A program made the translations under genes and the position numbers. The notes under the pieces were generated by a model, which saw only the letters and a list, made by a program, of their open reading frames with translations, did no database searches and was not told the origin of the DNA. A DNA stretch of 64,000 nt, taken from positions 5,952,001 to 6,016,000 of the forward strand of contig CATNEN010000005.1 of the NCBI GenBank assembly GCA_950097015.1, read 5' to 3'. This stretch comes from Macrostomum hystrix (lineage: Eukaryota > Animalia > Platyhelminthes). Below, one piece after another: positions 3,779-57,812 of the stretch (positions are counted from its first letter, which is position 1; each line of letters opens with the position of its first letter).

Positions 3779-6700
3779 ATGGACACCAATGCTAGCGTCC
3801 GTGGACCGGAAGATGCCGGATCAGAGGACCGGGAACTCGAGGATGCAGAATCGCCGGTCTCTACGTGGGAAGACAGTGGATCAATGAGTCAGAGAAGTGA
3901 GGCGGACTCAACTTTCTTTCTGCTGTGCGAAGTAAGCTTCTTAGAGCCAGAGTTCTTCTGGGACATCAATAAAAATAGTCTGCGCAATGACCTTCTTCGA
4001 GCCATAGACAGCAGCGACTCTGAGGAGCTGAGCAGAATATCAGACAGAATCAGAAGAGGACTTCAAGACGATGAGGATGCAGAAGTGAAAGTGCTGCTGC
4101 TTATGTCAGCCGCCAAGCCAGACCTGGAACTGCTGCAGTTCTTGACTGAAAGACACGCCGACTCATGCCTGCAGGTGCGAAGTTCATCAGCGAACAACAT
4201 GCTGCACTTTGTGTGCGGATGCGACAACTCAGATTCAGCAACTGCAGCCTTGGAGCTGATCTACAACAAAGTGGGCAAACAGCTGGTCAAGGAGCTCAAC
4301 AACTCGAAGCAGCTGCCTGTACACATCGCAGCTGAAAACAGCAAGAATCCTGCAGTGTTTCTCTGGCTCATTTCCACCGTCGAGGACAAGAATCTGTTTT
4401 TCGTTCAAGACGATGACGGCTACAGTGCTGTTAGCACTGCATTTTTTAAACAGAACTTGGACACACTCAAACAAGTGACTGAGAAGCTTAGTCTGGCGGA
4501 GTGCCTGGCGGCCAAAACTGCCAAAAATGAAAATATTTGCAAAAGAGCCGCATTCAATACAGCCAATCCTGCAGTGTTTCTCTGGCTCATTTCCACCGTC
4601 GAGGACAAGAATCTGTTTTTCGTTCAAGACGATGACGGCTACAGTGCTGTTAGCATAGCGTTTCTATATCAGAACTTGGACACACTCAAACAAGTGACTG
4701 AGAAGCTTGGTCTGGCGGAGTGCCTGGCGGCAAAAACTGCCAAAAATCAAAATATTTGCCTTCGAGCCGCAGCGAATTCAGCCAATCCTGCAGTGTTTCT
4801 CTGGCTCATTTCCACCGTCGAGGACAAGAATCTGTTTTTCGTTCAAGACGATGACGGCTACAGTGCTGTTAGCATAGCGTTTCTATATCAGAACTTGGAC
4901 ACACTCAAACAAGTGACTGAGAAGCTTGGTCTGGCGGAGTGCCTGGCGGCAAAAACTGCCAAAAATCAAAATATTTGCCTTGCAGCCGCATTCAATACAG
5001 CCAATCCTGCAGTGTTTCTCTGGCTCATTTCCACCGTCGAGGACAAGAATCTGTTTTTCGTTCAAGACGATTACGGCGAAAGTGCTGTTAGCGTAGCATT
5101 TGTAAAGCAGAACTTGGACACACTCAAACAAGTGACTGAGAAGCTTGGTCTGGCGGATTGCCTGGCGACGAAAACTGCCAAAAATCAAAATATTTGCCTT
5201 CGAGCCGCATTCAATCCAGCCAATCCTGCAGTGTTTCTCTGGCTCATTTCCATCGTCGAGGACAAGAATCAGTTTTTCGTTCAAGACGACGACGGCTACA
5301 GTGCTGTTAGCGGAGCATTTGAGAAACAGAACTTGGACACACTCAAACAAGTGACTGAGAAGCTTGGTCTGGCGGAGTGCCTGGCGGCAAAAACTACCAA
5401 AAATCAAAATATTTGCCTTCGAGCCGCATTCAATTCAGCCAATCCTGCAGTGTTTCTCTGGCTCATTTCCACCGTCGAGGACAAGAATCTTTTTTTCGTT
5501 CAAGACGATGACGGCTACAGTGCTGTTAGCATAGCGTTTTATAAGCAGAACTTGGACACTCTCAAACAAGTGACTGAGAAGCTTGGTCTGGCGGAGTGCC
5601 TGGCGGCAAAAACTGCCAAAAATGAAAATATTTGCCTTCGAGCCGCATTCAATACAGCCAATCCTGCAGTGTTTCTCTGGCTCATTTCCACCGTCGAGGA
5701 CAAGAATCTGTTTTCCGTTCAAGACGATTTTGGCAGAGCTGCTGTTAGCCGCGCATTTGAGGAGCAGAATTTGGACACACTCAAACAAGTGACTGAGAAG
5801 CTTGGTCTGGCGGAGTGCCTGGCGGCAAAAACTGCCAAAAATGAAAATATTTGCCTTCGAGCCGCATTCAATACAGCCAATCCTGCAGTGTTTCTCTGGC
5901 TCATTTCCATCGTCGAGGACAAGAATCTGTTTTTCTGTCACGATGATGACGGCTACAGTGCTGTTAGCATAGCATTTTATAAGCAGAACTTGGACACACT
6001 GAAACAAGCGACTGAGAAGCTTGGTCTGGCGGAGTGCCTGGCGGCAAAAACTGCCAAAAATGAAAATATTTGCCTTCGAGCCGCATTCAATACAGCCAAT
6101 CCTGCAGTGTTTCTCTGGCTCATTTTTACCGTCGAGGACAAGAATCTGTTTTTCGTTCAAGACGATGACGGCTACAGTGCTGTTAGCATCGCATTTCAGA
6201 AGCAGAACTTGGACACACTGAAACAAGTGACTGAGAAGCTTGGTCTGGCGGAGTGCCTGGCGGCAAAAACTGCCAAAAATCAAAATATTTGCCTTGCAGC
6301 CGCATTCAATACAGCCAATCCTGCAGTGTTTCTCTGGCTCATTTCCACCGTCGAGGACAAGAATCAGTTTTTCGTTCAAGACGATTACGGCGAAAGTGCT
6401 GTTAGCGTAGCATTTGTAAAGCAGAACTTGGACACACTCAAACAAGTGACTGAGAAGCTTGGTCTGGCGGATTGCCTGGCGACGAAAACTGCCAAAAATC
6501 AAAATATTTGCCTTCGAGCCGCATTCAATCCAGCCAATCCTGCAGTGTTTCTCTGGCTCATTTCCATCGTCGAGGACAAGAATCTGTTTTTCGTTCAAGA
6601 CGACGACGGCTACAGTGCTGTTAGCGGAGCATTTGAGAAACAGAACTTGGACACACTCAAACAAGTGACTGAGAAGCTTGGTCTGGCGGAGTGCCTGGCG

Positions 6701-9700
6701 GCAAAAACTACCAAAAATCAAAATATTTGCCTTCGAGCCGCATTCAATTCAGCCAATCCTGCAGTGTTTCTCTGGCTCATTTCCACCGTCGAGGACAAGA
6801 ATCTGTTTTTCGTTCACAACGATGACGGCTACAGTGCTGTAACCACAGCATTTGAGAAGCAGAATTTGGACACACTCAAACAAGTGACTGAGAAGCTTGG
6901 TCTGGCGGAGTGCCTGGCGGCAGAAAATGCCAAAGGTCAATGTGGTTTGCATGCAGCGGCCTGGAACAGAGAGAATCCAGCCTTATTTCGATGGCTCATT
7001 TCCATCGTCGAGGACAAGAAACTCTTCTTTGAAAAGCATGATGATGGAGCTGCTGCTGTATCCTTTGCCTTTTATCGCCAAGGGTTGGTCACAGTGAAGC
7101 TTTTGACAGACCGTTTTGGACTCAGCGAGTGTTTGAGTTGCATTGACAATCTAAATCGGGATTTGTTTTTTTTTTCCTCACTTAACAGCGTGAACCCGGG
7201 AGTATTTAGCTGGCTTCTAGAGCAGGTCTCCCAGCAATGTCCAGACAAGAAGTCCAGAATCTTCGAGTTGGATTCCAACGGCAACACTCTCCTTCATGCA
7301 CTGTTTAGGAAGGTCGATTTGTTTGGCGATGCTGATGCGCTTGCAGTGCTGATCGGCCGCATCGACTTTCTTTTTGAAAATGAAGTTGATCCAAGAAAAG
7401 AAAACAAATTCAGACTCAACTGTCTGCTTGCCCCTGAATCCAGTGCTTACAATCTCAATCGTCTTTTGCGAGCTCTTCAAAAATCAGCGCATTTGGAAAT
7501 CTTCAGAAATCTGCAAAGAAACTCGGAGGGCCTTCATGCAGCTCATGTCTTCTGCACTCGCTACGATCTCCGAGTTATCGAGAACGATTTGAGCAAGCTG
7601 TGCGGTCTCAGTCCTGACGAGCTCCTTGCAGTCCGAGTTTCTGACGGACCGCTGAAGGACGCGACTTGTCTGCACTTTGCCTGCGAATCCGGTCACAAGT
7701 TGAACATCGAATACCTTCTAAAGAAAGGACGGAAGCTGGAAGATGAGACAGACGCCGGGCAGACGAGTGTCGACTTTGCCTGCAACAAGGCGAAGCTCGA
7801 GGATGTTTTGGACGTTGCAGAGAAGTCAGTTGGTCTCAGAAAACTGCTCAAGCTGGTTGATCCAACGAAGCGAGCTCTGAACCTTCCGGACGTTCAGAGC
7901 GCCCGAGGTCACCTGACTCGTTTCAACGACTCATCGCTGAAGGCCAGCATTGAGGATGATAAATCCAGACGACAGACGAGAGGCAAGGAAGCCGGTGGGA
8001 TGAAAAACGAGAGTCTGCAGGCCGGACACGGAGCTGACAGCATTTCAAAGTCCGAGGATTCGCCAGAAGTGAAAATGCTGTTCAGAGCATTCGAGCTCGA
8101 CTCAAGTGAGATGCTCCGCAGCTTGATCAGTTTGGGCTTCGCCATCGATGAGATCGATGACCAGTTCTCCAGGCATGTCTCAAAACAGATTGGCAATGGG
8201 CGGGAAAGCAGTAAGTCTCCTACAATAGCCAAGCTTCAAAAGTACTTCTCCTCAGAAGGAAGAGATTCTGAAGCTCTCATGCTGATGGAGTACGCAGTGC
8301 TGCTCGAGAAGCCGAAGCTGCTCAATGACCTGATGCTTTTGCCACAGTTTGACATCATCCCACAGACTTTGAGGCTGCTCGTTTATCTCAAGCCCAGAGT
8401 GAAGTCGAGCAATGTTGAGAATCTGAAAAAAGTGCAAGCTCTAGCCTTGAACATTGTCGTCAATGTTCTGGAGCACCTCTACGTGAATGCCGATGAAAAA
8501 CAGCGGAATCTTGTTTTCGACTACCTGAGTGGCTCATTTATGGTGTCAGACGGGCATTCTCAGGTTCGAGTTCCGAGGTTCCCGCCACCATTGGATTATC
8601 TTACCAGAAAAATTTCAAACGATAAAACTGATCACGAAAAAGTGAGCAAAGATGCGAAGACACCAAAAAAGCCATCAGAAAAGAAGTCTGCAGCTGCAGT
8701 GATGTCAGTGATGGATCTGGTGCAGACCCTGGACTGTGACGATGTGTTTGCCACTGACTGCATCAGCCAGTTGGTGGATCGGCAGTGGAACGAGGCTCCA
8801 CCGCTGCCCTGGAGCAGTCCTGCACGCTGCTGCTCATGCAACATACCGCAAAAGGTGACAATTAAACAGCGGTTTATCATCCACTCTGTCTTTTTCCTGG
8901 TCTTTCTGCTCTACTTTGCTTGGTACGTGACGGATTTCAGTCGGACAAAGCAGTTTCCGATTCTAGACGTCGTCCTGTTGGCCTACGCGCTGTCCTTCAC
9001 TCTGCAGGAAGTCAACGACTTGCTGAACAAGCTGTCTATGAAGGACATACGAATTTTCAGAAGGCACATGAGATGTCCTCGCTACTTCACCGACTTCTTC
9101 AACTACTTTGACATGCTCGGCCTGCTGCTGATGTGGGCGGGGCTGGTCCTGAAGCTGCTTGGCCGGCTGAGCGACCCCAGCCTCATGCGCAGCTCTCAGG
9201 TCGTCCTCAGCGTCTCGTTCCTGTTCCTGGGATTCCGCTCCGTGGCCCTGCTCAGCTACTTCAAGGTCACTGGGCCGAACATCAATATGCTGAAGAGCTT
9301 GCTGTTCAAAGACCTGCTGCCATTCTTGATCATCATGCTGGTTCTGATCTTCTCATTTGGCATTTTCTTCTTCAACCTGCTGTTCCCGGCCTTCTCAGAC
9401 CTGACAGACGTCCTGGCTCTCGTGAAGATTTTCACAACGCCCTTGTCGCTGGCCTTAAGCATCTTTGAGCTCTCGCTGTTCGAGTCGTGCAACTCCAGCA
9501 GTCTCGCGACCGGACAGACCTGTGCGGACAGTGGAGGCAACCAGGTGTACAGCCTATTCCTGATGTTCGTGTACGTCTTGCTGGTGAACATTGTGATGTT
9601 CAATCTGCTGATCGCACTGTTCAACCGCACCGTGACAGCGATGGCCAGCAGGGCGGAGGTTCTGTGGCGCAAGAATCTGTTCGAGCTGCTGGAGGAGTTC

Positions 9701-9835
9701 GCAGAGGTCAGTCCGGTTCCGCCGCCGCTGTCGTTCCCGCTCTACGCCTGGAAACTGCTGCGGAGGTGCCGCCCTTCGCACTGCCGACCCTGCGCTGGCA
9801 AAGTCGGTCCTTTTGACGGCTCTGAGATAAGCAAG
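3779..9835 (+). CDS. Ankyrin-repeat TRP-family cation channel, paralog 1, large coding exon (2019 codons; spliced protein ~2201 aa)
   Basis: Uninterrupted ORF; ankyrin motifs (NNMLHFVC, QLPVHIAA, GNTLLHAL, ATCLHFACESGH); 13 x 73-aa units; pre-S1 FATDCISQLVDRQW; six hydrophobic segments; YFTDFFNYFD, GPNINML, NLLIALFNRTV, TRP-domain-like W...EEF...PVPPPL; ends at phase-0 donor AAG/GTAAGA. Confidence 0.92.
4307..7153 (+). repeat. Intragenic array of 13 x 219-bp units (two ankyrin-like repeats per 73-aa unit), gene 1
   Basis: NPA motif codons at 4346 and 6974 are exactly 12 x 219 bp apart; last unit is a diverged cap (GQCGLHAAAWN). Confidence 0.95.
8870..9740 (+). other. S1-S6 transmembrane/pore module and TRP domain of gene 1 (homologous regions ~34429-35299 and ~56847-57717)
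   Basis: Six hydrophobic helices; pore loop with Cys pair flanking an N-glycosylation sequon (CNSSSLATGQTC); S6-TRP helix register matches TRPM-type channels by eye. Confidence 0.85.
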
Positions 9836-10481
9836 GTAAGAGGCCTGGTGGACTGAGGGACTGACTCTGTTACTCACAGATGATAAATGGTCTGAATATA
9901 TATAGCCCTTAGATTCAGTCAGACAATGACCGAATCCAATTTTCGATTGAAAGAACTGATTGTGTGTACATGAATGCAAATGGCTTTGTAGCAAAGACAT
10001 GCTCAGATTATAGTAAGCTGGGGCTGGTCATGAAACTCTTGAGGACTGATTAACAGTAGAAGCAAGGTGAGAGGCCTGGTGAGCACAGGTGAACTGAGGG
10101 GCTGACTATGTTTACTCATATAGGCACTAGATTCAGTCAGACGATGACCGAATCCAATTCAGAGCAATGTTGGTTGTCCTTGTCACCAGGGTCTTCGACG
10201 AGAATCGTTGAATATCTTATCGATGCCGATGTTATGACTCTGGAAGTTGTTTCATCGGATAGAGCGGAAAATGTAGCCCGTCATCTGGATTTTTACAGTG
10301 GTTGGTTGGATATTTTTAAGATAGAGAAAAAAATAAAACATGTGGGTATTTGAATTACTCCCCTTGTGGTCTTTGTACTGTTAAGGATTAGTCAAGCCTC
10401 CAACCCGTTTGCCTGAGTTCTTAAGCCACTTAAACCAAACCGCTAGTTTCAAGGCGCTCTTCCTCACGGCTTCCGTTCCAG
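9836..10481 (+). other. Intron of gene 1 (646 nt, GT-AG, phase 0)
   Basis: GTAAGA donor and TTCCGTTCCAG acceptor; splicing joins exon 1 in frame to an open exon; same sites in all three paralogs. Confidence 0.85.
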
Positions 10482-11030
10482 CCGTGGTGGACGAACCGGA
10501 GCGACTTCAGCGGCTACCCCGAAGACTTCAAGCGCTTCCTGATCTTCCAGGCTGAGCAGCTGCGGCAGCAGCGGCCGCGGCTCCAGCGGGCGGTCGAGCG
10601 GCACAAGGGGGACGTCGATGTGATGAAGGCGCACGTGGAGAACCAGGTCAAGGACCTGCGGGAGGAACTGCTCACGGCTCAGAGAGAGGACACTGAGAAA
10701 ATCGAGACCGATGTGAAGGGCGTCAAAGAAAGTGTTGGAAAGCTGAACGCGGATGTTGGAAAGATGAACGCAGATGTTGGAAAGCTGAACGCGGATGTTG
10801 GAAAGCTGAACGCGGATGTTGGAAAGCTGAACGCGGATGTTGGAAAGCTGAACGCGGATGTTGGAAAGCTGAACGAGGGCGTCAACGAACTCAAAGAGCT
10901 GCAGCTCCGCCAACGAAGACGAGCAAAGCGTCTAGACGATAAGATGACAGAAAATTCCGAGAACCTGCAGCAGCAAATGTCGCAGGTGATGAGCATTCTG
11001 CAGCAACTGCAGCAGCAGCGTCAGCAGTGA
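10482..11030 (+). CDS. Terminal coding exon of gene 1 (182 aa; PWWTNRSDFSGYPEDFKRF... plus coiled coil)
   Basis: Open in phase 0 from the acceptor to TGA; contains ORF-track 10620..11030; GC-rich codon style like exon 1; heptad repeats. Confidence 0.85.
   Translation, partial: PWWTNRSDFSGYPEDFKRFLIFQAEQLRQQRPRLQRAVERHKGDVDVMKAHVENQVKDLREELLTAQREDTEKIETDVKGVKESVGKLNADVGKMNADVGKLNADVGKLNADVGKLNADVGKLNADVGKLNEGVNELKELQLRQRRRAKRLDDKMTENSENLQQQMSQVMSILQQLQQQRQQ
10737..10883 (+). repeat. 21-bp coding repeat, 7 heptads GK(L/M)N(AD/EG)V of the C-terminal coiled coil
   Basis: GTTGGAAAGCTGAACGCGGAT-type tandem repeats; V and L at a/d positions. Confidence 0.9.
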
Positions 11031-22805: not shown

Positions 22806-22904
22806 GGCTGGTGGAATTTCGCTGGCGAGCTTTGTTTACAGTTTAGGCGGAAATTCTTCGTTTGGTTGTACAGTTGCCGACTGGGGCGAATATTTTGAGA
22901 ACTG

Positions 22905-27726: not shown

Positions 27727-30700
27727 ATGAATTTTTTATTTCTTTGCGACCTCGATTTGTGGCTCGCCGACGCGACCAGTCTGCGCAATGACCTTCTTCG
27801 AGCCATAGACAGCAGCGACTCTGAGGAGCTGAGCAGAATATCAGACAGAATCAGAAAAGGACTTCAAGATCATGAGGATGCAAAAGTGAAAGCGCTGCTG
27901 CTTCTGTCAGCCGCCAAGCCAGACCTGGAACTGCTGCAGTTCTTGACTGAAAGACATGCCGATTCATGCCTGCAGGTGCGAAGTTCATCAGCGAACAACA
28001 TGCTGCACTTTGTGTGCGGATGCATCAACTCAGATTCAGCAACTGCAGCCTTGGAGCTGATCTACAACAAAGTGGGCAAACAGCTGGTCAAGGAGGTCAA
28101 CAACTCGAAGCAGCTGCCTGTACACATCGCAGCTATAAACAGCAAGAATCCTGCAGTGTTTCTCTGGCTCATTTCCTTCGTCGAAGACAAGAATCTGTTT
28201 TTCGTTCAAGACGACGACGGCTACAGTGCTGTTAGCATCGCATTTTTTTATCGGAACTTGGACACACTCAAACAAGTGACTGAGAAGCTTGGTCTGGCGG
28301 AGTGCCTGGCGGCAAAAACTGCCAAAAATCAAAATATTTGCCTTCGAGCCGCATTCAATACAGCCAATCCTGCAGTGTTTCTCTGGCTCATTTCCACCGT
28401 CGAGGACAAGAATCTGTTTTTCGTTCAAGACGATGACGGCTACAGTGCTGTTAGCACAGCGTTTCTACATCAGAACTTGGACACACTCAAACAAGCGACT
28501 GAGAAGCTTGGTCTGGCGGAGTGCCTGGCGGCAAAAACTGCCAAAAATCAAAATATTTGCCTTCGAGCCGCAGCGAATTCAGCCAATCCTGCAGTGTTTC
28601 TCTGGCTCATTTCCACCGTCGAGGACAAGAATCTGTTTTTCGTTCAAGACGATGACGGCGAAAGTGCTGTTGGCAGAGCATTTTATGAGCACAATTTGGA
28701 CACGCTCAAACAAGTGACTGAGAAGCTTGGTCTGGCGGAGTGCCTGGCGGCAAAAACTGCCAAAAATCAAAATATTTGCAAAAGAGCCGCATTCAATACA
28801 GCCAATCCTGCAGTGTTTCTCTGGCTCATTTCCACCGTCGAGGACAAGAATCTGTTTTTCGTTCAAGACGATGACGGCTACAGTGCTGTTAGCACAGCGT
28901 TTCTACATCAGAACTTGGACACACTCAAACAAGTGACTGAGAAGCTTGGTCTGGCGGAGTGCCTGGCGGCAAAAACTGCCAAAAATCAAAATATTTGCTT
29001 TCGAGCCGCATTCAATACAGCCAATCCTGCAGTGTTTCTCTGGCTCATTTCTATCGTCGAGGACAAGAATCTGTTTTTCGTTCAAGACGATGACGGCTAC
29101 AGTGCTGTTAGCACAGCGTTTCTACATCAGAACTTGGACACTCTCAAACAAGTGACTGAGAAGCTTGGTCTGGCGGAGTGCCTGGCGGCAAAAACTGCCA
29201 AAAATGAAAATATTTGCCTTCTTGCCGCATTCAATACAGCCAATCCTGCAGTGTTTCTCTGGCTCATTTCCATCGTCGAGGACAAGAATCAGTTTTTCGT
29301 TCAAGACGACGACGGCTACAGTGCTGTTAGCATCGCATTTTTTAATCGGAACTTGGACACACTCAAACAAGTGACTGAGAAGCTTGGTCTGGCGGAGTGC
29401 CTGGCGGCAAAAACTGCCAAAAATCAAAATATTTGCAAAAGAGCCGCATTCAATACAGCCAATCCTGCAGTGTTTCTCTGGCTCATTTCCATCGTCGAGG
29501 ACAAGAAACTGTTTTTCGTTCAAGACGATGACGGCGAAAGTGCTGTATACACCGCCTTTGATCAGCTGAACTTGGACACTCTCAAACAAGTGACTGAGAA
29601 GCTTGGTCTGGCGGAGTGCCTGGCGGCAAAAACTGCCAAAAATCAAAATATTTGCAAAAGAGCCGCATTCAATACAGCCAATCCTGCAGTGTTTCTCTGG
29701 CTCATTTCCACCGTCGAGGACAAGAAACTGTTTTTCGTTCAAGACGACGACGGCTACAGTGCTGTTAGCATCGCATTTTTTAATCGGAACTTGGACACAC
29801 TCAAACAAGTGACTGAGAAGCTTGGTCTGGCGGAGTGCCTGGCGGCAAAAACTGCCAAAAATCAAAATATTTGCTTTGTAGCCGCATTCAATACAGCCAA
29901 TCCTGCAGTGTTTCTCTGGCTCATTTCCACCGTCGAGGACAAGAATCTGTTTTTCGTTCAAGACGATGACGGCTACAGTGCTCTTAGCGCAGCATTCGAG
30001 AAGCAGAACTTGGACACTCTCAAACAAGTGACTGAGAAGCTTGGTCTGGCGGAGTGCCTGGCGGCAAAAACTGCCAAAAATGAAAATATTTGCCTTCGAG
30101 CCGCATTCAATACAGCCAATCCTGCAGTGTTTCTCTGGCTCATTTCCACCGTCGAGGACAAGAATCTGTTTTTCGTTCAAGACGATGACGGCTACAGTGC
30201 TGTTAGCACTGCATTTGAGAAGCAGAATTTGTACACTCTCAAACAAGTGACTGAGAAGCTTGGTCTGGCGGAGTGCCTGGCGGCAAAAACTGCCAAAAAT
30301 GAAAATATTTGTAAAAGAGCGGCATTCAATACAGCCAATCCTGCAGTGTTTCTCTGGCTCATTTCCACCGTCGAGGACAAGAATCTGTTTTTCGTTCACA
30401 ACGATGACGGCTACAGTGCTGTAACCACAGCATTTGAGAAGCAGAATTTGGACACACTCAAACAAGTGACTGAGAAGCTTGGTCTGGCGGAGTGCCTGGC
30501 GGCAAAAACTGCCAAAAATCAAAATATTTGCCTTCTTGCCGCATTCAATACAGCCAATCCTGCAGTGTTTCTCTGGCTCATTTCCACCGTCGCGGACAAG
30601 AATCTGTTTTTCGTTCAAGACGATGACGGCTACAGTGCTCTTAGCGCAGCATTCGAGAAGCAGAACTTGGACACTCTCAAACAAGTGACTGAGAAGCTTG

Positions 30701-33700: not shown

Positions 33701-35394
33701 CCATCGATGAGATCGATGACCAGTTCTCCAGGCATGTCTCAAAGCAAATTGGCAATGGGCGGGAAAGCAGTAAGTCTCCTACAATAGCCAAGCTTCAAAA
33801 GTACTTCTCCTCAGAAGGAAGAGATTCTGAAGCTCTCATGCTGATGGAGTATGCAGTGCTGCTCGAGAAGCCGAAGCTGCTCAATGACCTGATGCTTCTG
33901 CCACAGTTTGACATCATCCCACAGACTTTGAGGCTGCTCGTTTATCTCAAGCCCAGAGTGAAGTCGAGCAATGTTGAGAATCTGAAAAAAGTGCAAGCTC
34001 TAGCCTTGAACATTGTCGTCAATGTTCTGGAGCACCTCTACGTGAATGCTGATGAAGAAGAGCGGAATCTTGTTTTCGACTACCTGAGTGGCTCATTTAT
34101 GGTGTCAGACGGGCATCCTCAGGTTCGAGGTCCGAGGTTCCCGCCACCATTGGATTATCTTACCAGACCAATTTCAAACGATAAAACTGATCACGAAAAA
34201 GTGAGCAAAGATGCGAAGACACCAAAAAAGCCATCAGAAAAGAAGTCTGCAGCTGCAGTGATGTCAGTGATGGATCTGGTGCAGACCCTGGACTGTGACG
34301 ATGTGTTTGCCACTGACTGTATCAGCCAGTTGGTGGATCGGCAGTGGAACGAGGCTCCACCGTTGCCCTGGAGCAGTCCTGCACGCTGCTGCTCATGCAA
34401 CATACCGCAAAAGGTGACAATTAAACAGCGGTTCTTCATCCACTCTGCTTTTTTCCTGGTCTTTCTTCTCTACTTTGCCTGGTACGTGACGGATTTCAGT
34501 CGGACAAAGCAGTTTCCGATTCTAGACGTCGTCCTGTTGGCCTACGCGCTGTCCTTCACTCTGCAGGAAGTCAACGACTTGCTGAACAAGCTGTCTATGA
34601 AGGACATACGAATTTTCGGAAGTCACAGGAGATGTCCTCGCTACTTCACCGACTTCTTCAACTACTTTGACATGCTCGGCCTGCTGCTGATGTGGGCGGG
34701 GCTGGTCCTGAAGCTGCTTGGTCGGCTGAGCGACCCCAGCCTCATGCGCAGCTCTCAGGTCGTCCTCAGCGTCTCGTTCCTGTTCCTGGGATTCCGCTCC
34801 GTGGCCCTGCTCAGCTACTTCAAGGTCACTGGGCCGAACATTAGTATGCTGAAGAGCTTGCTGTTCAAAGACCTGCTGCCATTCTTGATCATCATGCTGG
34901 TTCTGATCTTCTCATTTGGCATTTTCTTCTTCAACCTGCTGTTCCCGGCCTTCTCAGACCTGACAGACGTCCTGGCTCTCGTGAAGATTTTCACAACGCC
35001 CCTGGCGCTGGCCTTAAGCATCTTTGAGCTCTCGCTGTTCGAGTCGTGCAACTCCAGCAGTCTCGCGACCGGACAGACCTGTGCGGACAGTGGAGGCAAC
35101 CAGGTGTACAGCCTATTCCTGATGTTCGTGTACGTCTTGCTGGTAAACATTGTGATGTTCAACCTGCTGATCGCACTGTTCAACCGCACCGTGACAGCGA
35201 TGGCCAGCAGGGCGGAGGTTCTGTGGCGCAAGAATCGGTTCGAGCTGCTGGAGGAGTTCGCAGAGGTCAGTCCGGTTCCGCCGCCGCTGTCGTTCCCGCT
35301 CTACGCCTGGAAACTGCTGCGGAGGTGCCGCCCTTCGCACTGCCGACCCTGCGCTGGCAAAGTCGGTCCTTCTGACGGCTCTGAGAGAAGCAAG
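27727..35394 (+). CDS. Ankyrin-repeat TRP-family cation channel, paralog 2, large coding exon (2556 codons; spliced protein ~2720 aa)
   Basis: Uninterrupted ORF; near-identical to paralog 1 from SLRND onward; 21 x 73-aa units; short divergent N-terminus (start codon less certain); phase-0 donor at 35395. Confidence 0.9.
28108..32712 (+). repeat. Intragenic array of 21 x 219-bp double-ankyrin units, gene 2
   Basis: NPA codons at 28147 and 32527 are 20 x 219 bp apart; cap unit has a 2-aa insertion (APGNLGSNAVNN). Confidence 0.95.
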
Positions 35395-35799
35395 GTAAGA
35401 GGCCTGGTGGACTGAGGGACTGACTCTGTTACTCACAGATGATAAATGGTCTGAATATATAGCCCTTAGATTCAGTCAGACAATGACCGAATCCAATTTT
35501 CAATTGCAAGAACTGATTGTGTGTACATGAATGTAAATGGCTTTATAGCAAAGACATGCTCAGATTATAGTAAGCTGGGGCTGGTCATGAAACTCTTGAG
35601 GACTGATTAACAGTAGAAGCAAGGTGAGAGGCCTGGTGAGCGCAGGTGAACTGAGGGGCTGACTATGTTTACTCATATAGGCACTAGATTGAGTCAGACG
35701 ATGACCGAATCCAATTTGAATGGAAATAACTGGTTGTGTGCACATGATTGCAAATAAGCTCATGTTTCAAGGCGCTCTTCCTCACGGCTTCCGTTCCAG
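35395..35799 (+). other. Intron of gene 2 (405 nt, GT-AG, phase 0)
   Basis: Same donor and acceptor as gene 1; in-frame join. Confidence 0.85.
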
Positions 35800-50544: not shown

Positions 50545-51330
50545 GATTAGAGTGAGCAACTGAGAGGATGAGAGTGAGGAACTGAGAGGGATGAGAGTGA
50601 GGAACTGAGAGGGATGAGAGTGAGGAACTGAGAGGGATGAGAGTGAGGAACTGAGAGGGATGAGAGTGAGGAACTGAGAGGGATGAGAGTGAGGAACTGA
50701 GAGGGATGAGAGTGAGGAACTCAGAGGGATTAGAGTGAGGAACTGAGAGGGATTAGAGTGAGGAACTGAGAGGGATGAGAGTGAGGAACTGAGAGGACAT
50801 TGGAGTGAGGAACTCAGAGGGATTAGAGTGAGGAACTGAGAGGGATTAGAGTGAGGAACTGAGAGGACATTGGAGTGAGGAACTCAGAGGGATTAGAGTG
50901 AGGAACAGAGAGGGATGAGAGTGAGGAACAGAGAGGGATGAGAGTGAGGAACAGAGAGGGATGAGAGTGAGGAACAGAGAGGGATGAGAGTGAGGAACTG
51001 AGAGGGATTAGAGTGAGGAACTCAGAGGGATGAGAGTGAGGAACTGAGGGATTAGAGTGAGGAACTGAGAGGGATTAGAGTGAGGAACTGAGAGGGATGA
51101 GAGTGAGGAACTCAGAGGGATGAGAGTGAGGAACAGAGAGGGATGAGAGTGAGGAACAGAGAGGGATGAGAGTGAGGAACTGAGAGGGATTAGAGTGAGG
51201 AACTCAGAGGGATGAGAGTGAGGAACTGAGAGGGATTAGAGTGAGGAACTGAGAGGGATTAGAGTGAGGAACTGAGAGGGATTAGAGTGAGGAACCGAGA
51301 GGACATTGGAGTGAGGAACAGAGAGGGTGA
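50545..51330. repeat. Minisatellite A (23 bp), unit 3
   Basis: Same unit and same terminal sequence as 1-3190. Confidence 0.95.
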
Positions 51331-51882
51331 TGTGAGGTGGAGAAGTGGGACTTGGGAACAGGGTTAAAACTTTAGCAAATTTTCAAGATTAGATATTTCA
51401 TTTCTAATATTAGCTATTTCATTTTTCTAGTATTATTTTTTTATATATTATTAGCAGTTCTATGGTAAAATTATTTAACGAAAAATACATTACTTGTGCC
51501 ACCCAGCAATACGTTGTCAGGCAATAATTGTACCTGAAAATTATTTACAAAAAAACTGCACCAATTTTGGATCTCAATTTTATATTCTACTCGTAATTTA
51601 CCATTAAACTCAATAAAAGGTTGATGAGCACAGGCTGGATAGAGGAATGAGGATCCAGAATAGGGAGATAGGGAGAATGCAGAATGGGAAGAGAGGAACG
51701 GAAGGAGGATGTCTGGGAGATTCAATAGCGGGAATAAGAAGGTGATAAGCGGTACACGCATGAATGTGCTCATATTTTTAATGTCTTGTAATTTCAAAAC
51801 ATTTTCATTAATTGCATTTTTTAATTAACGGCACGTGCAGCAGCATTTCAAGTACACGAATGAGAACTTTATTGTTTCCAAC

Positions 51883-51896
51883 GTTCTTTTTTTCAG
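51883..51896 (+). other. 3' splice acceptor (TTCTTTTTTTCAG) 54 nt upstream of gene 3 ATG
   Basis: Homologous to 3710-3724. Confidence 0.65.
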
Positions 51897-51950
51897 CCAA
51901 AAAAGTCTTCTGAGAAGAATTTCACGGACTAGCAAGAGAAGCAAGGGTTC

Positions 51951-54900
51951 ATGGACACCAATGCTAGCGTCCGTGGACCGGGAGATGCCAGATCAGAGGA
52001 CCGGGAACTCGAGGATGCAGAATCGCCGGTCTCTACGTGGGAAGACAGTGGATCAATGAGTCAGAGAAGTGAGTCGGACTCAACTTTCTCTCTGAGCTAT
52101 GAAAACTTCGTAATGAACCAAGAGCCGGAGTTGCTAGTTTTCTTCTGGGACATCAAGCATGGAGGTGTTGAAAATAGTCTGCGCAATGACCTTCTTCGAG
52201 CCATAGACAAAAGCGACTCTGAGGAGCTGAGCAGAATATCAGACAGAATCAGAAAAGGACTTCAAGACGATGAGGATGCAGAAGTGAAAGCGCTGCTGCT
52301 TCTGTCAGCCGCCGAGCAAGAGCTGGAACTGCTGCAGTTCTTGACTGAAAGACATGCCGACTCATGCCTGCAGGCGCGAAGTTCATCAGCAAACAACATG
52401 CTGCACTTCGTGTGCGGATGCAACAACTCAGATTCAGCAACTGCAGCCTTGGAGCTGATCTATAACAAAGTGGGCAAACAGCTGGTCAAGGAGGTCAACA
52501 ACTCGAAGCAGCTGCCTGTACACATCGCCGCATTCAATACAGCCAATCCTGCAGTGTTTCTCTGGCTCATTTCCACCGTCGAGGACAAGAAACTGTTTTT
52601 CGTTCAAGACGATGACGGCTACAGTGCTGTTAGCATCGCCTTTGATCAGCTGAACTTGGACACACTCAAACAAGTGACTGAGAAGCTTGGTCTGGCGGAG
52701 TGCCTGGCGGCAAAAACTGCCAAAAATGAAAATATTTGCCTTCGAGCCGCAGCGAATTCAGCCAATCCTGCAGTGTTTCTCTGGCTCATTTCCACCGTCG
52801 AGGACAAGAATCTGTTTTTCGTTCAAGACGATGACGGCTACAGTGCTGTTAGCACCGCCTTTGATGAGCTGAACTTGGACACACTCAAACAAGTGACTGA
52901 GAAGCTTGGTCTGGCGGAGTGCCTGGCGGCGAAAACTGCCAAAAATCAAAATATTTGCCTTCTAGCCGCATTCAATACAGGCAATCCTGCAGTGTTTCTC
53001 TGGCTCATTTCCACTGTCGAGGACAAGAATCTGTTTTTCGTTCAAGACGATGACGGCTACAGTGCTGTTAGCACAGCGTTTCTACATCAGAACTTGGACA
53101 CACTCAAGCAAGTGACTGAGAAGCTTGGTCTGGCGGAGTGCCTGGCGGCAAAAACTGCCAAAAATGAAAATATTTGCCTTCGAGCCGCAGCGAATTCAGC
53201 CAATCCTGCAGTGTTTCTCTGGCTCATTTCCACCGTCGAGGACAAGAATCTGTTTTTCGTTCAAGACGATGACGGCTACAGTGCTCTTAGCGCAGCATTC
53301 GAGAAGCAGAACTTGGACACTCTCAAACAAGTGACTGAGAAGCTTGGTCTGGCGGAGTGCCTGGCGGCAAAAACTGCCAAAAATCAAAATATTTGCCTTC
53401 GAGCCGCATTCAATACAGCCAATCCTGCAGTGTTTCTCTGGCTCATTTCCACCGTCGAGGACAAGAATCTGTTTTTCGTTCAAGACGATGACGGCTACAG
53501 TGCTGTTAGCACAGCGTTTCTACATCAGAACTTGGACACACTCAAGCAAGTGACTGAGAAGCTTGGTCTGGCGGAGTGCCTGGCGGCAAAAACTGCCAAA
53601 AATGAAAATATTTGCCTTCGAGCCGCAGCGAATTCAGCCAATCCTGCAGTGTTTCTCTGGCTCATTTCCACCGTCGAGGACAAGAATCTGTTTTTCGTTC
53701 AAGACGATGACGGCTACAGTGCTCTTAGCGCAGCATTCGAGAAGCAGAACTTGGACACTCTCAAACAAGTGACTGAGAAGCTTGGTCTGGCGGAGTGCCT
53801 GGCGGCAAAAACTGCCAAAAATCAAAATATTTGCCTTCGAGCCGCATTCAATACAGCCAATCCTGCAGTGTTTCTCTGGCTCATTTCCACCGTCGAGGAC
53901 AAGAATCTGTTTTTCGTTCAAGACGATGACGGCTACAGTGCTCTTAGCGCAGCATTCGAGAAGCAGAACTTGGACACTCTCAAACAAGTGACTGAGAAGC
54001 TTGGTCTGGCGGAGTGCCTGGCGGCAAAAACTGCCAAAAATCAAAATATTTGCCTTCGAGCCGCATTCAATACAGCCAATCCTGCAGTGTTTCTCTGGCT
54101 CATTTCCACCGTCGAGGACAAGAATCTGTTTTTCGTTCAAGACGATGACGGCTACAGTGCTGTTAGCACTGCATTTGAGAAGCAGAATTTGTACACTCTC
54201 AAACAAGTGACTGAGAAGCTTGGTCTGGCGGAGTGCCTGGCGGCAAAAACTGCCAAAAATCAAAATATTTGTAAAAGAGCGGCATTCAATACAGCCAATC
54301 CTGCAGTGTTTCTCTGGCTCATTTTTACCGTCGAGGACAAGAATCAGTTTTTCGTTCAAGACGATGACGGCGAAAGTGCTGTTAGCACCGCATTTGAGAA
54401 GCTGAACTTGGACACACTCAAACAAGTGACTGCGAAGCTTGGTCTAGCAGAGTGCCTGGCGGCAAAAACTGCCAAAAATGAAAATATTTGTAAAAGAGCC
54501 GCATTCAATACAGCCAATCCTGCAGTGTTTCTCTGGCTCATTTTTACCGTCGAGGACAAGAATCAGTTTTTCGTTCAAGACGATGACGGCGACAGTGCTG
54601 TTTGCATAGCATTTTATAGGCAGAATTTGTACACACTCAAACAAGTGACTGAGAAGCTTGGTCTGGCGGAGTGCCTGGCAGCAAAAATTGCCAAAAATCA
54701 AAATATTTGTCTTGTAGCCGCATTCAATACAGACAATCCTGCAGTGTTTCTCTGGCTCATTTCCACCGTCGAGGACAAGAAACTGTTTTTCGTTCATGAC
54801 GATTATGGCCAAACTGCTGTTAGCCACGCATTTGAGAAGCAGAATTTGGACACTCTCAAACAAGTGACTGAGAAGCTTGGTCTGGCGGAGTGCCTGGCGG

Positions 54901-57812
54901 CAAAAACTGCCAAAAATGAAAATATTTGCCTTCGAGCCGCATTCAATACAGCCAATCCTGCAGTGTTTCTCTGGCTCATTTCCATCGTCGAGGACAAGAA
55001 ACTCTTCTTTGAAAAGGATGATGATGGTGATGATGGTGTATCCATTGCCTTTCATCGACAAGGCTTGAACACAGTGAAGTTTTTGACAGACCGTTTTGGA
55101 CTCAGCGAGTGTTTGAGCTGCATTGACAATCTAAATCGGGATTTGTTTTATGATTCCATTCTGAACAGCGCGAACCCGGGAGTATTTCCCTGGCTTCTCG
55201 AGCAGGTCTCCCAGCAATGTCCAGAAAAGAAGTCCAGAATTTGCGAGTTGGATTCCAACGGCAACACTCTGCTTCATGCACTGTTTAGGAAGGTCGATTT
55301 GTTCGGCGATGTTGATGCGCTTGCAGTGCTGATTGGCCGCATAAACTTTCTTTTTGAAAATGAAGTTGATCCAAGAAAAGAAAACAAATTTAGACTCAAC
55401 TGTCTGCTTGCCGCTGAATCCAGTGCTGACAATCTCAATTGTCTTTTGCGAGCTCTTCAAAGATCAGCGCATTTGGAAATCTTCAGAAATCTGCAAAGAA
55501 ACTCGGAGGGCCTTCACGTAGCTCATGTCTTCTGCACTCGCTACGAGCTCCGAGATATCAAGAACGATTTGAGCAAGCTGTGCGGTCTCAGTCCTGACGA
55601 GCTCCTTGCAGTCCGAGTTTCTGACGGACCGCTGAAGGATGCAACTTGTCTGCACTTTGCCTGCGAATCCGGTCACAAGTTGAACATCGAATACCTTCTA
55701 ATGAAAGGACGGAGGCTGGAAGATGAGACAGACGCCGGGCAGACGAGTGTCGACTTTGCCTGCAACAAGGCGAAGCTCGAGGATGTTTTGGATGTTGCAG
55801 AGAAGTCAGTTGGTCTCGGAAAACTGCTCAAGCTGGTTGATCCAACGAAGCGAGCTCTGAACCTTCCGGACGTTCAGAGCGCCCGAGGTCACCTGACTCG
55901 ATTCAACGACTCATCGCTCAAGGCCAGCATTGAAGATGATAAATCCAGACGACAGACGAGAGGCAAGGAAGCCGGTGAGATTAAAAATGAGAGTCATGTC
56001 GGATACGGAGCTGACAGCATTTCAAAGTCCGAGGATTCGCCAGAAGTGAAAATGCTGTTCAGAGCATTCGAGCTCGACTCAAATGAGATGCTCCGCAGCT
56101 TGATCAGTTTGGGCTTCGCCATCGATGAGATCGATGACCAGTTCTCCAGGCATGTCTCAAAGCAGATTGGCAATGGACGGGAAAGCAGTAAGTCTCCTAC
56201 AATAGCCAAGCTTCAAAAGTACTTCTCCTCAGAAGAAAGAGATTCTGAAGCTCTCATGCTGATGGAGTACGCAGTGCTGCTCGAGAAGCCGAAGCTGCTC
56301 AATGACCTGATGCTGCTGCCACAGTTTGACATCATCCCACAGACTTTGAGGCTGCTCGTTTATCTCAAGCCCAGAGTGAAGTCGAGCAATGCTGAGAATC
56401 TGAAAAAAGTGCAAGCTCTAGCCTTGAACATTGTCGTCAATGTTCTGGAGCACCTCTACGTGAATGCTGATGAAGAAGAGCGGAATCTTGTTTTCGACTA
56501 CCTGACTGGCTCATTTATGGTGTTAGACGGGCATTCTCAGGTTCGAGGTCCGAGGTTCCCGCCACCATTGGATTATCTTACCAGACCAATTTCAAACGAT
56601 AAAACTGATCTCGAAAAAGTGAGCAAAGATGCGAAGAAACCAAAAAAGCCATCAGAAAAGAAGTCTGCAGCTGCAGTGATGTCAGTGATGGAGCTGGTGC
56701 AGACCCTGGACTGTGACGATGTGTTTGCCACTGACTGTATCAGCCAGTTGGTGGATCGGCAGTGGAACGAGGCTCCACCGCTGTCCTGGAGCAGTCCTGC
56801 ACGCTGCTGCTCATGCAACATACTGCAAAAGGTGACAATTCAACAGCGGTTTATCGTCCACTCTGCCTTTTTCCTGGTCTTTCTGCTCTACTTTGCCTGG
56901 TACGTGACGGATTTCAGTCGGACAAAGCAGTTTCCGATTCTAGACGTCGTCCTGTTGGCCTACGCGCTGTCCTTCACTCTGCAGGAAGTCAACGACTTGC
57001 TGAACAAGCTGTCTGTGAAGGACATACGAATTTTCAGAATGCACATGAGATGTCCTCGCTACTTCACCGACTTCTTCAACTACTTTGACATGCTCGGCCT
57101 GCTGCTGATGTGGGCGGGGCTGGTCCTGAAGCTGCTTGGCCGGCTGAGCGACCCCAGCCTCATGCGCAGCTCTCAGGTCGTCCTCAGCGTCTCGTTCCTG
57201 TTCCTGGGATTCCGCTCCGTGGCCCTGCTCAGCTACTTCAAGGTCACTGGGCCGAACATCAATATGCTGAAGAGCTTGCTGTTCAAAGACCTGCTGCCAT
57301 TCTTGATCATCATGCTGGTTCTGATCTTCTCATTTGGCATTTTCTTCTTCAACCTGCTGTTCCCGGCCTTCTCAGACCTGACAGACGTCCTGGCTCTCGT
57401 GAAGATTTTCACAACGCCCCTGGCGCTGGCCTTAAGCATCTTTGAGTTCTCGCTGTTCGAGTCGTGCAACTCCAGCAGTCTCGCGACCGGACAGACCTGT
57501 GCGGACAGTGGAGGCAACCAGGTGTACAGCCTATTCCTGATGTTCGTGTACGTCTTGCTGGTAAACATTGTGATGTTCAACCTGCTGATCGCACTGTTCA
57601 ACCGCACCGTGACAGCGATGGCCAGCAGGGCGGAGGTTCTGTGGCGCAAGAATCTGTTCGAGCTGCTGGAGGAGTTCGCAGAGGTCAGTCCGGTTCCGCC
57701 GCCGCTGTCGTTCCCGCTCTACGCCTGGAAACTGCTGCGGAGGTGCCGCCCTTCGCACTGCCGACCCTGCGCTGGCAAAGTCGGTCCTTCTGACGGCTCT
57801 GAGAGAAGCAAG
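51951..57812 (+). CDS. Ankyrin-repeat TRP-family cation channel, paralog 3, large coding exon (1954 codons; spliced protein ~2055 aa)
   Basis: Uninterrupted ORF; 12 x 73-aa units; same channel core; phase-0 donor at 57813. Confidence 0.92.
52506..55133 (+). repeat. Intragenic array of 12 x 219-bp double-ankyrin units, gene 3
   Basis: NPA codons at 52545 and 54954 are 11 x 219 bp apart; first and last units are hybrids of cap and internal halves. Confidence 0.95.

What the first reader, a model, noticed from the sequence alone, without database searches (positions are those of the whole stretch)
4307..55133. Hypervariable residues fall on the ankyrin binding-surface positions while the scaffold is frozen
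Numbering the unit from NQNIC, variation concentrates at position 44 (T,I,V,G,R,A,L,H), 47 (F,L,V,E,Y,Q,D), 48 (K,Y,E,H,N,Q,R), 39 (Y,E,R,F,D,Q), 37 (D,Y,F), and in the other half 2, 6, 7 (R,A,L,V), 10 and 12. On the consensus D-x-x-G-x-T-P-L-H-x-A-A-x-x-G these are mostly the x positions: the hairpin and post-AA sites randomised in DARPin libraries plus the exposed site before AA. Outer helices (14-22, 50-69) are almost invariant even at third codon positions. The variable codons differ by multi-base non-synonymous changes (ACT/ATA/GTA/GGA/CGC/CAC at 44). This suggests diversifying selection on a concave surface, like TALE RVDs.
Basis: partly seen in the sequence, partly recalled or inferred. 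Interest (0 to 1): 0.88.

Follow-up and report, generated by a model that had tools for sequence, protein, structure and literature searches.

The report
Variable-groove ankyrin arrays on flatworm channels
Three neighbouring flatworm ion-channel genes each carry a long string of almost identical double-ankyrin units that differ mainly at the residues lining the ankyrin binding groove; the pattern is real and unusual for an animal channel, but selection for diversity is suggested rather than proven.

Summary
Three tandem paralogues (+ strand ORFs 3779-9856, 27727-35415, 51951-57833) of a Macrostomum-type flatworm encode TRPM-like channels. Each N-terminus holds 12, 20 or 11 near-identical 73-aa units plus degenerate end units, 46 in all.

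An AlphaFold model (pLDDT 97) and fold and profile searches show that each unit is two ankyrin repeats. About 84% of the amino-acid entropy lies in the two inner helices, the loops before them and the following turn. An a-priori set of ankyrin binding-surface positions is enriched (p=5e-5), and a Macrostomum lignano homologue shows the same enrichment.

Synonymous diversity is also about 10-fold higher around the hot codons.
- With one synonymous rate for the whole unit, omega is 2-4.
- With a local rate it is 1-2.
- With a codon-specific rate it is not above 1.
- Neighbouring scaffold codons are strongly constrained.

Variation sits in about 21 short cassettes that recombination shuffles among units and genes.

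The closest known case is not TALE RVDs. It is the highly internally conserved ANK/TPR/WD repeats of fungal NLRs (PMC4986451). I rate this a new variant of a known kind. The scan had already found the same pattern in a neighbouring paralogue (s1-332670).

The parts
3779..9856 (+). Gene A: uninterrupted 2025-codon ORF. It encodes an N-terminal cap, a 73-aa unit array, further ankyrin repeats, a linker and a TRPM-like six-TM channel.
   Evidence: ORF list, translation, Pfam Ank_2 and Ion_trans, PDB TRPM matches
4307..6934 (+). Gene A core array: units A01-A12, 219 nt each. Codon p of a unit starting at s lies at s+3(p-1).
6935..7372 (+). Gene A degenerate end units A13 and A14. They are not homogenised. 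Codons 35-44 of A13 differ wholesale from the same codons of B21.
7655..7795 (+). Canonical ankyrin repeat downstream of the array (DATCLHFACESGH...). It is the best single Pfam Ank_2 stretch in protein A, residues 1293-1339.
8891..9655 (+). Gene A ion-transport (S1-S6) domain, protein residues 1705-1959, followed by a TRP-helix-like WRKNLFELLEEF.
   Evidence: Pfam PF00520; alignment to 6co7 TRPM2-like, E=3e-15
27727..35415 (+). Gene B: 2562-codon ORF with the same architecture. Its 5' end is unrelated to A and C upstream of AG|TCTGCGCAATG.
28108..32487 (+). Gene B core array: units B01-B20.
32488..32931 (+). Gene B degenerate end units B21 (75 codons, with a 6-nt insertion in the hairpin patch) and B22.
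34453..35214 (+). Gene B ion-transport domain, protein residues 2243-2496.
51951..57833 (+). Gene C: 1960-codon ORF with the same architecture.
52506..54914 (+). Gene C core array: units C01-C11.
54915..55352 (+). Gene C end units C12 and C13. In C12 the first 13 codons are of core type and the rest is degenerate.
56868..57632 (+). Gene C ion-transport domain, placed by alignment to A and B. Its own Pfam Ion_trans hit was not listed at E<=0.01.
   Evidence: inference by alignment

Best explanation
What it is. Three young tandem paralogues (synonymous divergence 0.02-0.05) encode TRP channels with a TRPM-like pore. Their N-terminus is a very long ankyrin solenoid, cytosolic by analogy with all TRP channels. 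It is built from 11-20 double-ankyrin units of 73 aa.

How the pattern arises. Unequal crossing-over and gene conversion keep the units almost identical (concerted evolution) and change their number. The remaining differences are carried in short, old cassettes. These lie on the exposed face of the two inner helices (ankyrin positions 9, 10, 13, 14), the next turn (15) and the preceding hairpin loops (3, 5). Together these make up the canonical ligand-binding groove.

Most likely reading. Homogenisation is resisted at the groove because arrays with a heterogeneous groove lining are favoured. This is diversity-retaining or diversifying selection. Linked synonymous differences survive with the cassettes, and recombination reshuffles the cassettes among units and paralogues. 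It is the same evolutionary regime as the highly internally conserved repeats of fungal NLRs.

Function (inferred). The groove would bind cytosolic partner(s) or a tether that controls the channel. Each paralogue would offer a different groove and solenoid length.

Shown: the architecture, the fold, where the variation lies, concerted evolution, recombination, purifying selection on the scaffold, and the regional excess of synonymous diversity.

Inferred: that selection (rather than tolerance) keeps the groove diverse, the cytosolic location, and ligand binding.
For: Architecture and fold.
- Searches give the gene architecture.
- The AF2 model has pLDDT 97.4, with inner helices at 4-10 and 41-48 and outer helices at 15-24 and 51-61.
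- All top Foldseek hits are ankyrin domains: Espin TM 0.73-0.75, ankyrin-1, TRPA1, NOMPC.
- The family profile hits the NOMPC ankyrin domain at E=2.4e-30, and the residue-level alignment fixes the position numbering.

Location of the variation.
- 84% of entropy lies in the inner helices, preceding loops and turn.
- The a-priori surface set is enriched at p=4.6e-5 in the window and p=0.003 in M. lignano P0005.

Selection.
- Scaffold codons inside the hot patch have omega about 0.25 (p=9e-8).
- The surface set has omega 2 (p=4e-5) with a unit-wide synonymous rate. The top three codons have omega 1.3-2 (p about 0.03) with a patch-wide rate.
- Synonymous diversity by region is 0.28 (codons 36-55) and 0.135 (1-13), against 0.026 (14-35) and 0.023 (56-73). 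The heterogeneity LRT gives p=2e-7.

Cassettes and recombination.
- Cassettes carry linked synonymous changes and are shared between genes B and C.
- Rm is at least 17 and the PHI-like test gives p=0.0005.
- Mean unit dS of 0.116 exceeds the dS between paralogues of 0.024-0.053.
- In the positionally orthologous end unit, only the hairpin and inner-helix patch was replaced between A13 and B21, with identical flanks.

Precedent. Fungal NLR ankyrin repeats show this regime, with variable sites on the concave face (PMC4986451).
Against: - With a codon-specific synonymous rate, codons 44, 47 and 48 show beta about equal to alpha (LRT about 0).
- The pooled a-priori set has omega 1.0.
- The sites with the best signal were chosen after looking at the data.
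- These positions are the least constrained ones in ankyrin repeats generally. They have the highest entropy in natural repeats (PMC4308713), so tolerance alone predicts variation there.
- The paralogues as a whole evolve under rather weak constraint (omega 0.32-0.83 after the array).
- The distant paralogue P0001 shows no surface enrichment.
- No ligand is known, there are no population data, and there is no direct proof of transcription. Only contigs of runs guessed to be RNA hold the gene.
Confidence: 0.48

Rival explanations
1. Relaxed constraint only. The arrays expanded and are homogenised by recombination. The groove positions are simply the residues an ankyrin fold does not need, so they drift at the neutral rate while the scaffold is purged. 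The local excess of synonymous differences arises because mismatches in the tolerant patch hinder conversion there, forming a neutral island of divergence.
For: - Omega is about 1 at 44/47/48 with site-specific synonymous rates.
- The pooled a-priori set has omega 1.0.
- piN is about equal to piS within the hot codons.
- The same positions have the highest entropy in natural ankyrin repeats in general (PMC4308713).
- Constraint is weak across the paralogues.
Against: - Whole-unit turnover by unequal crossing-over should erase diversity equally along the unit. Instead, synonymous diversity is 10-fold higher exactly around the variable codons in both halves.
- Several codons are replaced at all three bases while interleaved four-fold sites (38, 41) are untouched.
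- The replacement between A13 and B21 is restricted to the patch.
- Omega is 1.3-2 with the patch-wide rate.
Confidence: 0.36
2. Local mutational process. Codons 36-55 and 5-12 are hot spots for complex or templated mutation, that is, short-patch conversion from diverged family members or template switching. This injects multi-base changes, and only those on tolerant codons survive.
For: - Differences come as multi-base patches.
- A 30-36-nt block with a 6-nt indel was swapped between A13 and B21, with identical flanks.
- Many diverged family members exist in the genus.
Against: - No donor for the B21 patch exists in the window.
- Patches from a diverged donor should also change the interleaved synonymous sites at codons 38, 41 and 51, which are invariant.
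- Conversion needs homology, which is lowest in this patch.
Confidence: 0.1
3. TALE-like code. Each unit reads one element of a periodic ligand through its variable residues, so that the order of cassettes spells a target.
For: The only support is the overall look of near-identical repeats with a few variable residues, and the recurrence of some cassettes (LSAAFEKQ x8, STAFLHQ x5).
Against: - About 10-12 variable positions per unit and 21 cassettes in 40 units do not make a small alphabet.
- The fold is ankyrin, not TAL.
- The array sits on a membrane channel.
- The order of units is being scrambled by recent duplications.
- No periodic ligand is known.
Confidence: 0.04

Closest known systems
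Highly internally conserved (HIC) ANK/TPR/WD repeat domains of fungal NLR/STAND proteins (Paoletti 2007; Dyrka et al. 2014, PMC4986451)
   Same: - Repeats are more than 85% identical at the DNA level.
- Repeat number varies.
- Repeats recombine within and between loci.
- Variable sites fall on the concave face (inner helices and hairpin/loop) of the ankyrin domain.
   Different: - Here the array is on a metazoan TRP-type ion channel with no NOD NTPase domain.
- The unit is a 73-aa double repeat with an extra short helix in each half.
- Positive selection is not demonstrated once synonymous-rate variation is allowed for.
- Repeat-number differences are shown only between paralogues, not between individuals.
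NOMPC/TRPN mechanotransduction channel (29 ankyrin repeats; PDB 5vkq)
   Same: - A TRP channel with a very long N-terminal ankyrin solenoid.
- It is the best PDB sequence match of the family profile (E=2.4e-30). A protein with 29 repeats sums score, so this does not show a specific relationship.
   Different: - NOMPC repeats are individually distinct and their number is conserved across animals (PMC5100051). Here the units are homogenised and number 11-20.
- The pore domain here matches TRPM, not TRPN.
TRPM channels (e.g. Nematostella TRPM2-like 6co7, TRPM3, TRPM4)
   Same: The S1-S6 region and the TRP helix align at E=3e-15 to 1e-12.
   Different: No TRPM N-terminal homology (SLOG/MHR) domains were detected. 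An ankyrin array takes their place.
TALE repeats with repeat-variable di-residues
   Same: Tandem near-identical repeats whose differences concentrate at a few codons.
   Different: - TALE repeats vary at two adjacent residues in a 34-aa non-ankyrin repeat that reads DNA bases.
- Here 10-12 positions vary in a 73-aa ankyrin pair, and no code or nucleic-acid ligand is indicated.
Designed ankyrin libraries (DARPins; ANK-N5C, PMC4308713)
   Same: Variable positions 3, 5, 10, 13 and 14 coincide with positions randomised in these libraries, which form a continuous binding surface.
   Different: - Library positions 2 and 33 are not variable here.
- Framework positions 9 (His) and 15 (Gly) are variable here.
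- All repeats sit in one polypeptide rather than in a library of separate binders.

Membership tests
Ankyrin repeat | Helix-turn-helix plus hairpin/loop repeats stacked into a solenoid | tested here: met
   The AF2 model has pLDDT 97.4 and pTM 0.91, with two helix pairs per unit. The 50 listed Foldseek PDB hits are ankyrin-repeat proteins, with TM up to 0.75.
Ankyrin repeat | Significant profile similarity to known ankyrin repeats | tested here: met
   The family profile A2 matches PDB NOMPC at E=2.4e-30, TRPA1 at 5e-18 and the designed ankyrin protein 4gpm at 8e-18. The window's own units alone do not reach significance. Pfam Ank_2 passes only as a summed score.
Ankyrin repeat | TPLH motif with the conserved His at position 9 | tested here: not met
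   The window's units have L/K/F/I at unit position 6 and S at position 43. The M. lignano homologues keep His (P0005 at position 6; P0001 at 6 and 43). The motif is degenerate but the fold is retained.
TRPM channel | Six-TM pore domain and TRP helix homologous to TRPM | tested here: met
   Phmmer against PDB gives TRPM2-like at 3e-15 and TRPM3/4 at 1e-14 to 1e-13, with the alignment running through S6 and the TRP helix. Pfam Ion_trans also matches.
TRPM channel | N-terminal TRPM homology regions (SLOG/MHR) | tested here: not met
   Pfam finds no such domain in any of the three proteins. The N-terminus is ankyrin.
Fungal-NLR-type HIC repeat regime | Repeats at least 85% identical over at least 100 aa | tested here: met
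   TRF reports a 219-nt period with 92% matches over 11-20 copies. Amino-acid identity between two-unit blocks is 86-94%.
Fungal-NLR-type HIC repeat regime | Repeat-number variation and recombination between repeats | tested here: met
   The three paralogues have 12, 20 and 11 core units. Rm is at least 17 and the PHI-like test gives p=0.0005. Identical units are shared between B and C. Variation between individuals was not tested.
Fungal-NLR-type HIC repeat regime | Variable sites on the binding surface | tested here: met
Fungal-NLR-type HIC repeat regime | Positive diversifying selection at those sites | tested here: inconclusive
   Omega is 2-4 with a uniform synonymous rate, 1-2 with a patch-wide rate, and about 1 with a codon-specific rate.
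Fungal-NLR-type HIC repeat regime | NOD (NACHT/NB-ARC) NTPase architecture | tested here: not met
   There is no NACHT or NB-ARC domain. The effector part is an ion channel.
TALE-like code repeats | Variation confined to a di-residue per repeat, drawn from a small alphabet | tested here: not met
   At least 10 variable positions per unit, and 21 cassettes in 40 units.
NOMPC/TRPN | Conserved count of about 29 distinct ankyrin repeats on a TRPN pore | tested here: not met
   The unit number is variable and the units are homogenised. TRPM proteins are the best PDB matches of the pore region (3e-15 to 1e-8), and NOMPC is not among the 60 matches shown.

The most novel reading that the evidence does not exclude
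The homogenised ankyrin array is a germline-encoded, fast-reshuffling intracellular recognition module wired directly to a cation channel. It would be an animal counterpart of the fungal NLR repeat sensors, in which binding of a variable cytosolic (for example pathogen-derived) ligand in the groove gates ion flux.

In Macrostomum, the same kind of module would be combined with different effectors. Kinase fusions carrying the same double-ankyrin unit were seen here. Earlier notes of the scan report cGAS-like fusions; I did not test those.
Probability: 0.1. Interest if true: 0.9.

Novelty: new variant of a known kind. Interest (0 to 1): 0.55.

Why it matters
Concerted evolution of protein repeats with a variable binding face is known mainly from fungal immune-type receptors and is rare in animals (PMC4986451, PMC5100051). 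Finding it on the cytosolic arm of a TRP channel, in three young paralogues with different array lengths, gives a natural series of channels that differ almost only in groove lining and solenoid length.

That makes two questions testable in Macrostomum:
- What do long ankyrin arms of TRP channels bind?
- Does array length or groove composition tune gating?

It is also a caution about method. Site models with a single synonymous rate would call strong positive selection here. Allowing the synonymous rate to vary removes most of that signal.

Tried and rejected
- Sequence search of the window's own units against PDB, both as a single protein and as the narrow profile A1, gave only chance ISG15 matches. 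The broader family profile was needed.
- I looked for a donor of the B21 hairpin patch in the window and found none.
- Laying public contigs on gene A. Independent samples of one organism hold a copy about 98.5% identical across the unique 3' part, plus fragments of the array. Short contigs break inside the array. The library types are guesses, so neither transcription nor repeat-number polymorphism could be established.
- The findings index searched by sequence was blank.
- I rejected a misassembly or sequencing-error origin. Three ORFs of 6-7.7 kb are intact, the variation respects codons, and cassettes recur in different genes.
- I rejected the antisense ORFs inside the arrays (e.g. 29122-32505, minus strand) as genes. 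They are open frames of the repeated unit.
- A rank correlation of per-site entropy with the distant paralogue P0001 was null (rho 0.015). The groove pattern is therefore specific to this subfamily and not general to the family.
- Model coordinates are not returned by the tools. Solvent exposure was therefore inferred from secondary structure plus the residue-level alignment to canonical repeats, and was not computed.

Full report
**What is in the window.** The 64-kb window holds a segment of about 24 kb repeated three times. Each copy carries one long + strand ORF: A 3779-9856 (2025 aa), B 27727-35415 (2562 aa) and C 51951-57833 (1960 aa). The spacers between them are packed with minisatellites.

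Each protein has the following parts, in order:
- a short cap;
- an array with a 219-nt (73-aa) period at 92% matches;
- a few degenerate and canonical ankyrin repeats;
- a linker;
- a six-TM ion-transport domain, whose best solved relatives are TRPM channels (Nematostella TRPM2-like 6co7 at E=3e-15, TRPM3 and TRPM4 at about 1e-14), with the alignment running through S6 and the TRP helix.

No TRPM N-terminal homology domain is found. All 26 close homologues in a 5.8-billion-protein collection come from the flatworm Macrostomum lignano, and the only other hit is an ant TRPM at E=5e-8. The best homologue is 62-65% identical, so the window is most likely from another Macrostomum-type species.

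**Checking the observation.** Anchoring on the NPxxFxWL motif gives units spaced exactly 73 codons apart, apart from one 75-codon end unit. There are 43 core units (A01-A12, B01-B20, C01-C11) and three degenerate ones (A13, B21, C12).

Amino-acid entropy is highest at 44 (2.4 bits, 8 residues, 12 codons), 47 (2.3) and 48 (2.0). Next come 39, 6, 7, 12, 2, 49 and 43. Codons 14-22 do not vary at any of 27 nucleotides in 43 units.

One detail is wrong. Within '50-69', the third positions of codons 50, 53 and 55 are strongly polymorphic, and only 56-68 is nearly frozen.

**Is the unit ankyrin, and where do the variable sites lie?** The window's units alone are too degenerate to hit ankyrin repeats by sequence, and they have lost both canonical histidines. 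The M. lignano homologues keep canonical motifs (RTILHAAAEN, DEDGESAVHVAF) in the same 73-aa frame.

An AlphaFold2 model of four units, built with an alignment of window and M. lignano units, has pLDDT 97.4 and pTM 0.91. Each unit has helices at 4-10, 15-24, 28-31, 41-48, 51-61 and 63-68. All 50 listed Foldseek PDB hits are ankyrin domains, including Espin (TM 0.73-0.75), ankyrin-1, RNase L, TRPA1 and NOMPC.

The family profile hits the NOMPC ankyrin domain at E=2.4e-30. The printed alignment fixes the register:

| Unit positions | Canonical ankyrin position |
|---|---|
| 6 and 43 | His-9 |
| 7 and 44 | 10 |
| 10 and 47 | 13 |
| 11 and 48 | 14 |
| 12 and 49 | Gly-15 |
| 2 and 39 | 5 |
| 37 | 3 |

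So each unit is two ankyrin repeats of 36-37 aa, each with an extra short helix.

The ten most variable positions are the same structural positions in both halves. They lie on the inner helix (9, 10, 13, 14), the following turn (15) and the preceding hairpin loop (5). Inner helices, preceding loops and that turn hold 84% of the total entropy. The outer helices hold 9%.

I also tested a set defined in advance from designed-library practice. It takes positions 2, 3, 5, 13, 14 and 33 from DARPin design (my own knowledge) and adds position 10. PMC4308713 lists 2, 3, 5, 10 and 13 as the highest-entropy positions of natural repeats, which together with 33 form a continuous binding surface. In the window this set has mean entropy 0.88, against 0.18 outside it (p=4.6e-5). 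The M. lignano protein with the same unit type (P0005) shows the same enrichment (p=0.003). The more distant paralogue P0001 does not (p=0.7).

Exposure itself was inferred from secondary structure and this alignment. The tools do not return model coordinates.

**Selection tests.** The three paralogues differ by dS 0.024-0.053 after the array (omega 0.32-0.83). The units differ from each other by a mean dS of 0.116, so unit diversity is older than the gene triplication.

Synonymous diversity is very uneven along the unit:

| Codons | piS |
|---|---|
| 1-13 | 0.135 |
| 14-35 | 0.026 |
| 36-55 | 0.284 |
| 56-73 | 0.023 |

Third positions of invariant residues 45, 46, 50, 53 and 36 have pi of 0.25-0.49, right next to the hot codons.

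I wrote an MG94-type site model evaluated on a grid, using iqtree trees of the 36 distinct units and also separate trees for the two half-units.
- **One synonymous rate for all sites.** Codons 44, 39, 6, 47, 2, 7, 48, 30, 24 and 10 have beta of 3-8 (p from 2e-8 to 0.04). The a-priori surface set has omega 2 (p=4e-5).
- **Codon-specific synonymous rates.** Codons 44, 47 and 48 have beta about equal to alpha (LRT about 0). Only 6, 39 and 12 lean positive (p 0.03-0.08), and codon 2 leans the same way at p=0.10.
- **Synonymous rate shared across the patch 36-55.** The top three codons give omega 1.3-2 (p about 0.03, sites chosen post hoc). The a-priori set gives 1.0-1.5 (not significant).

Synonymous-rate heterogeneity is itself significant (LRT 151.9 on 73 df, p=2e-7). 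Scaffold codons inside the hot patch are strongly constrained (omega about 0.25, p=9e-8).

A tree-free count of minimum events gives the same picture.

By that criterion the claim of diversifying selection is not established.

**Cassettes and recombination.** Differences come as short haplotypes with linked synonymous changes. Examples:
- 42CTT-44GCA-46TTC-53ACT ('LSAAFEKQ', eight units in B and C);
- 45GCG-47CTA-48CAT ('STAFLHQ', five units).

Forty units carry 21 amino-acid cassettes in codons 36-55 and 15 haplotypes in the N-terminal half, in 34 combinations. Of 1326 informative site pairs, 489 fail the four-gamete test. Rm is at least 17 within 219 nt, and a PHI-like permutation test gives p=0.0005. 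Genes B and C share identical units (B14=C07, B15=C08).

In the non-homogenised end unit, A13 and B21 are identical except for codons 35-44. There a block of about 30 nt is replaced outright, with a 6-nt indel. No donor lies in the window.

Several codons are swapped at all three bases (6 CTT/AAA, 10 TTC/GCG, 47 GAG/CTA/TTT), while the four-fold sites of interleaved codons 38 and 41 never change.

A second M. lignano locus (L002) has five homogenised units. It also shows multi-base swaps at 37, 39 and 47, though codon 44 is fixed there.

**Interpretation.** Concerted evolution explains the frozen scaffold. Tolerance of the ankyrin fold explains why groove positions vary first. Tolerance alone does not easily explain why neutral diversity peaks 10-fold around exactly those codons in both halves. 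It also does not explain why only that patch was replaced in a positional orthologue.

Diversity-retaining selection against homogenisation predicts both, with synonymous sites hitch-hiking on the cassettes. I hold this reading at about 0.48. A neutral 'island of divergence' caused by mismatch-limited conversion is the main rival (about 0.36). A local templated mutation process is third (about 0.1).

The TALE analogy is superficial. The close precedent is the highly internally conserved ANK/TPR/WD repeats of fungal NLRs. Those show repeat-number polymorphism, recombination, and variable sites on the concave face of inner helices and hairpins (PMC4986451). That paper also reports that such repeats are rare in metazoa.

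NOMPC is the best-known channel with a long ankyrin arm, but its 29 repeats are distinct and stable in number (PMC5100051). I found no paper describing this flatworm family.

**Function.** This part is inferred. As in all TRP channels, the N-terminal arm should be cytosolic. The groove would therefore face cytosolic partners or a cytoskeletal tether, and the three paralogues offer different arm lengths and groove linings.

Public contigs from independent samples hold near-identical copies, including runs guessed to be RNA. Transcription is not proven here.

**Relation to earlier notes of the scan.** A follow-up on a neighbouring paralogue 44 kb beyond the window (s1-332670) reached the same verdict. 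My three-gene analysis agrees with it. It adds the synonymous-rate result, the cassette structure and the cross-species check.

Notes on ankyrin-cGAS-like genes with hypervariable arrays in the same genome (s1-085000) were not tested here. I did see the same double-ankyrin unit type fused to protein-kinase domains in M. lignano.

Noticed in passing
window 1-3191, 10733-27123, 36060-51327, 59304-62658: Each ~24-kb segment carries the same ordered series of about ten different minisatellites (periods 19-32, 56 nt). Copy numbers differ strongly between the three segments, for example the 22-mer at x73 against x83 and the 28-mer at x32 against x44.
   Followed up: no
window 27500-27790 versus 3700-4010 and 51870-52210: Gene B's 5' end is unrelated to A and C upstream of ...AG|TCTGCGCAATG (codons SLRND). 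In all three genes an AG precedes this point. The long ORFs may therefore be joined to different upstream exons, and the annotated ATGs may not be the true starts.
   Followed up: partly
window 54915-54953 (C12 codons 1-13) versus 6935-6973 (A13) and 32488-32526 (B21): In gene C the boundary of homogenisation lies half a unit further on. C12 begins with the core-type NENICLRAAFNTA, where A13 and B21 have GQCGLHAAAWNRE, which retains the canonical His.
   Followed up: partly
window 29122-32505 (- strand) and other antisense ORFs inside the arrays: Long antisense ORFs (up to 1127 aa) run through the arrays. They are open frames of the repeated unit and are not evidence of genes.
   Followed up: no
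M. lignano proteins P0031, P0033, P0036 (and P0029): The same 72-73-aa double-ankyrin unit type (with Trp at unit position 20) also occurs in M. lignano. There it is fused to protein-kinase domains or stands alone, so the array module is combined with different effector domains in this genus.
   Followed up: partly
protein P0028 (ENA assembly, 2304 aa, organism not named): This is another very long array of near-identical double-ankyrin units of about 66 aa (...DDGDSAVSIACERGHLEIVKCLL...). It was picked up by the unit profile at E=4e-51. It may be an independent case of a homogenised ankyrin array.
   Followed up: no
L001 (M. lignano NIVC01001627.1) 1591-3561: The more distant paralogue P0001 shows the opposite pattern. 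Its nine 73-aa units are only about 65-75% alike. They vary on the outer helices and loops (positions 56, 59, 62, 64, 67, 69) and keep the groove residues.
   Followed up: partly
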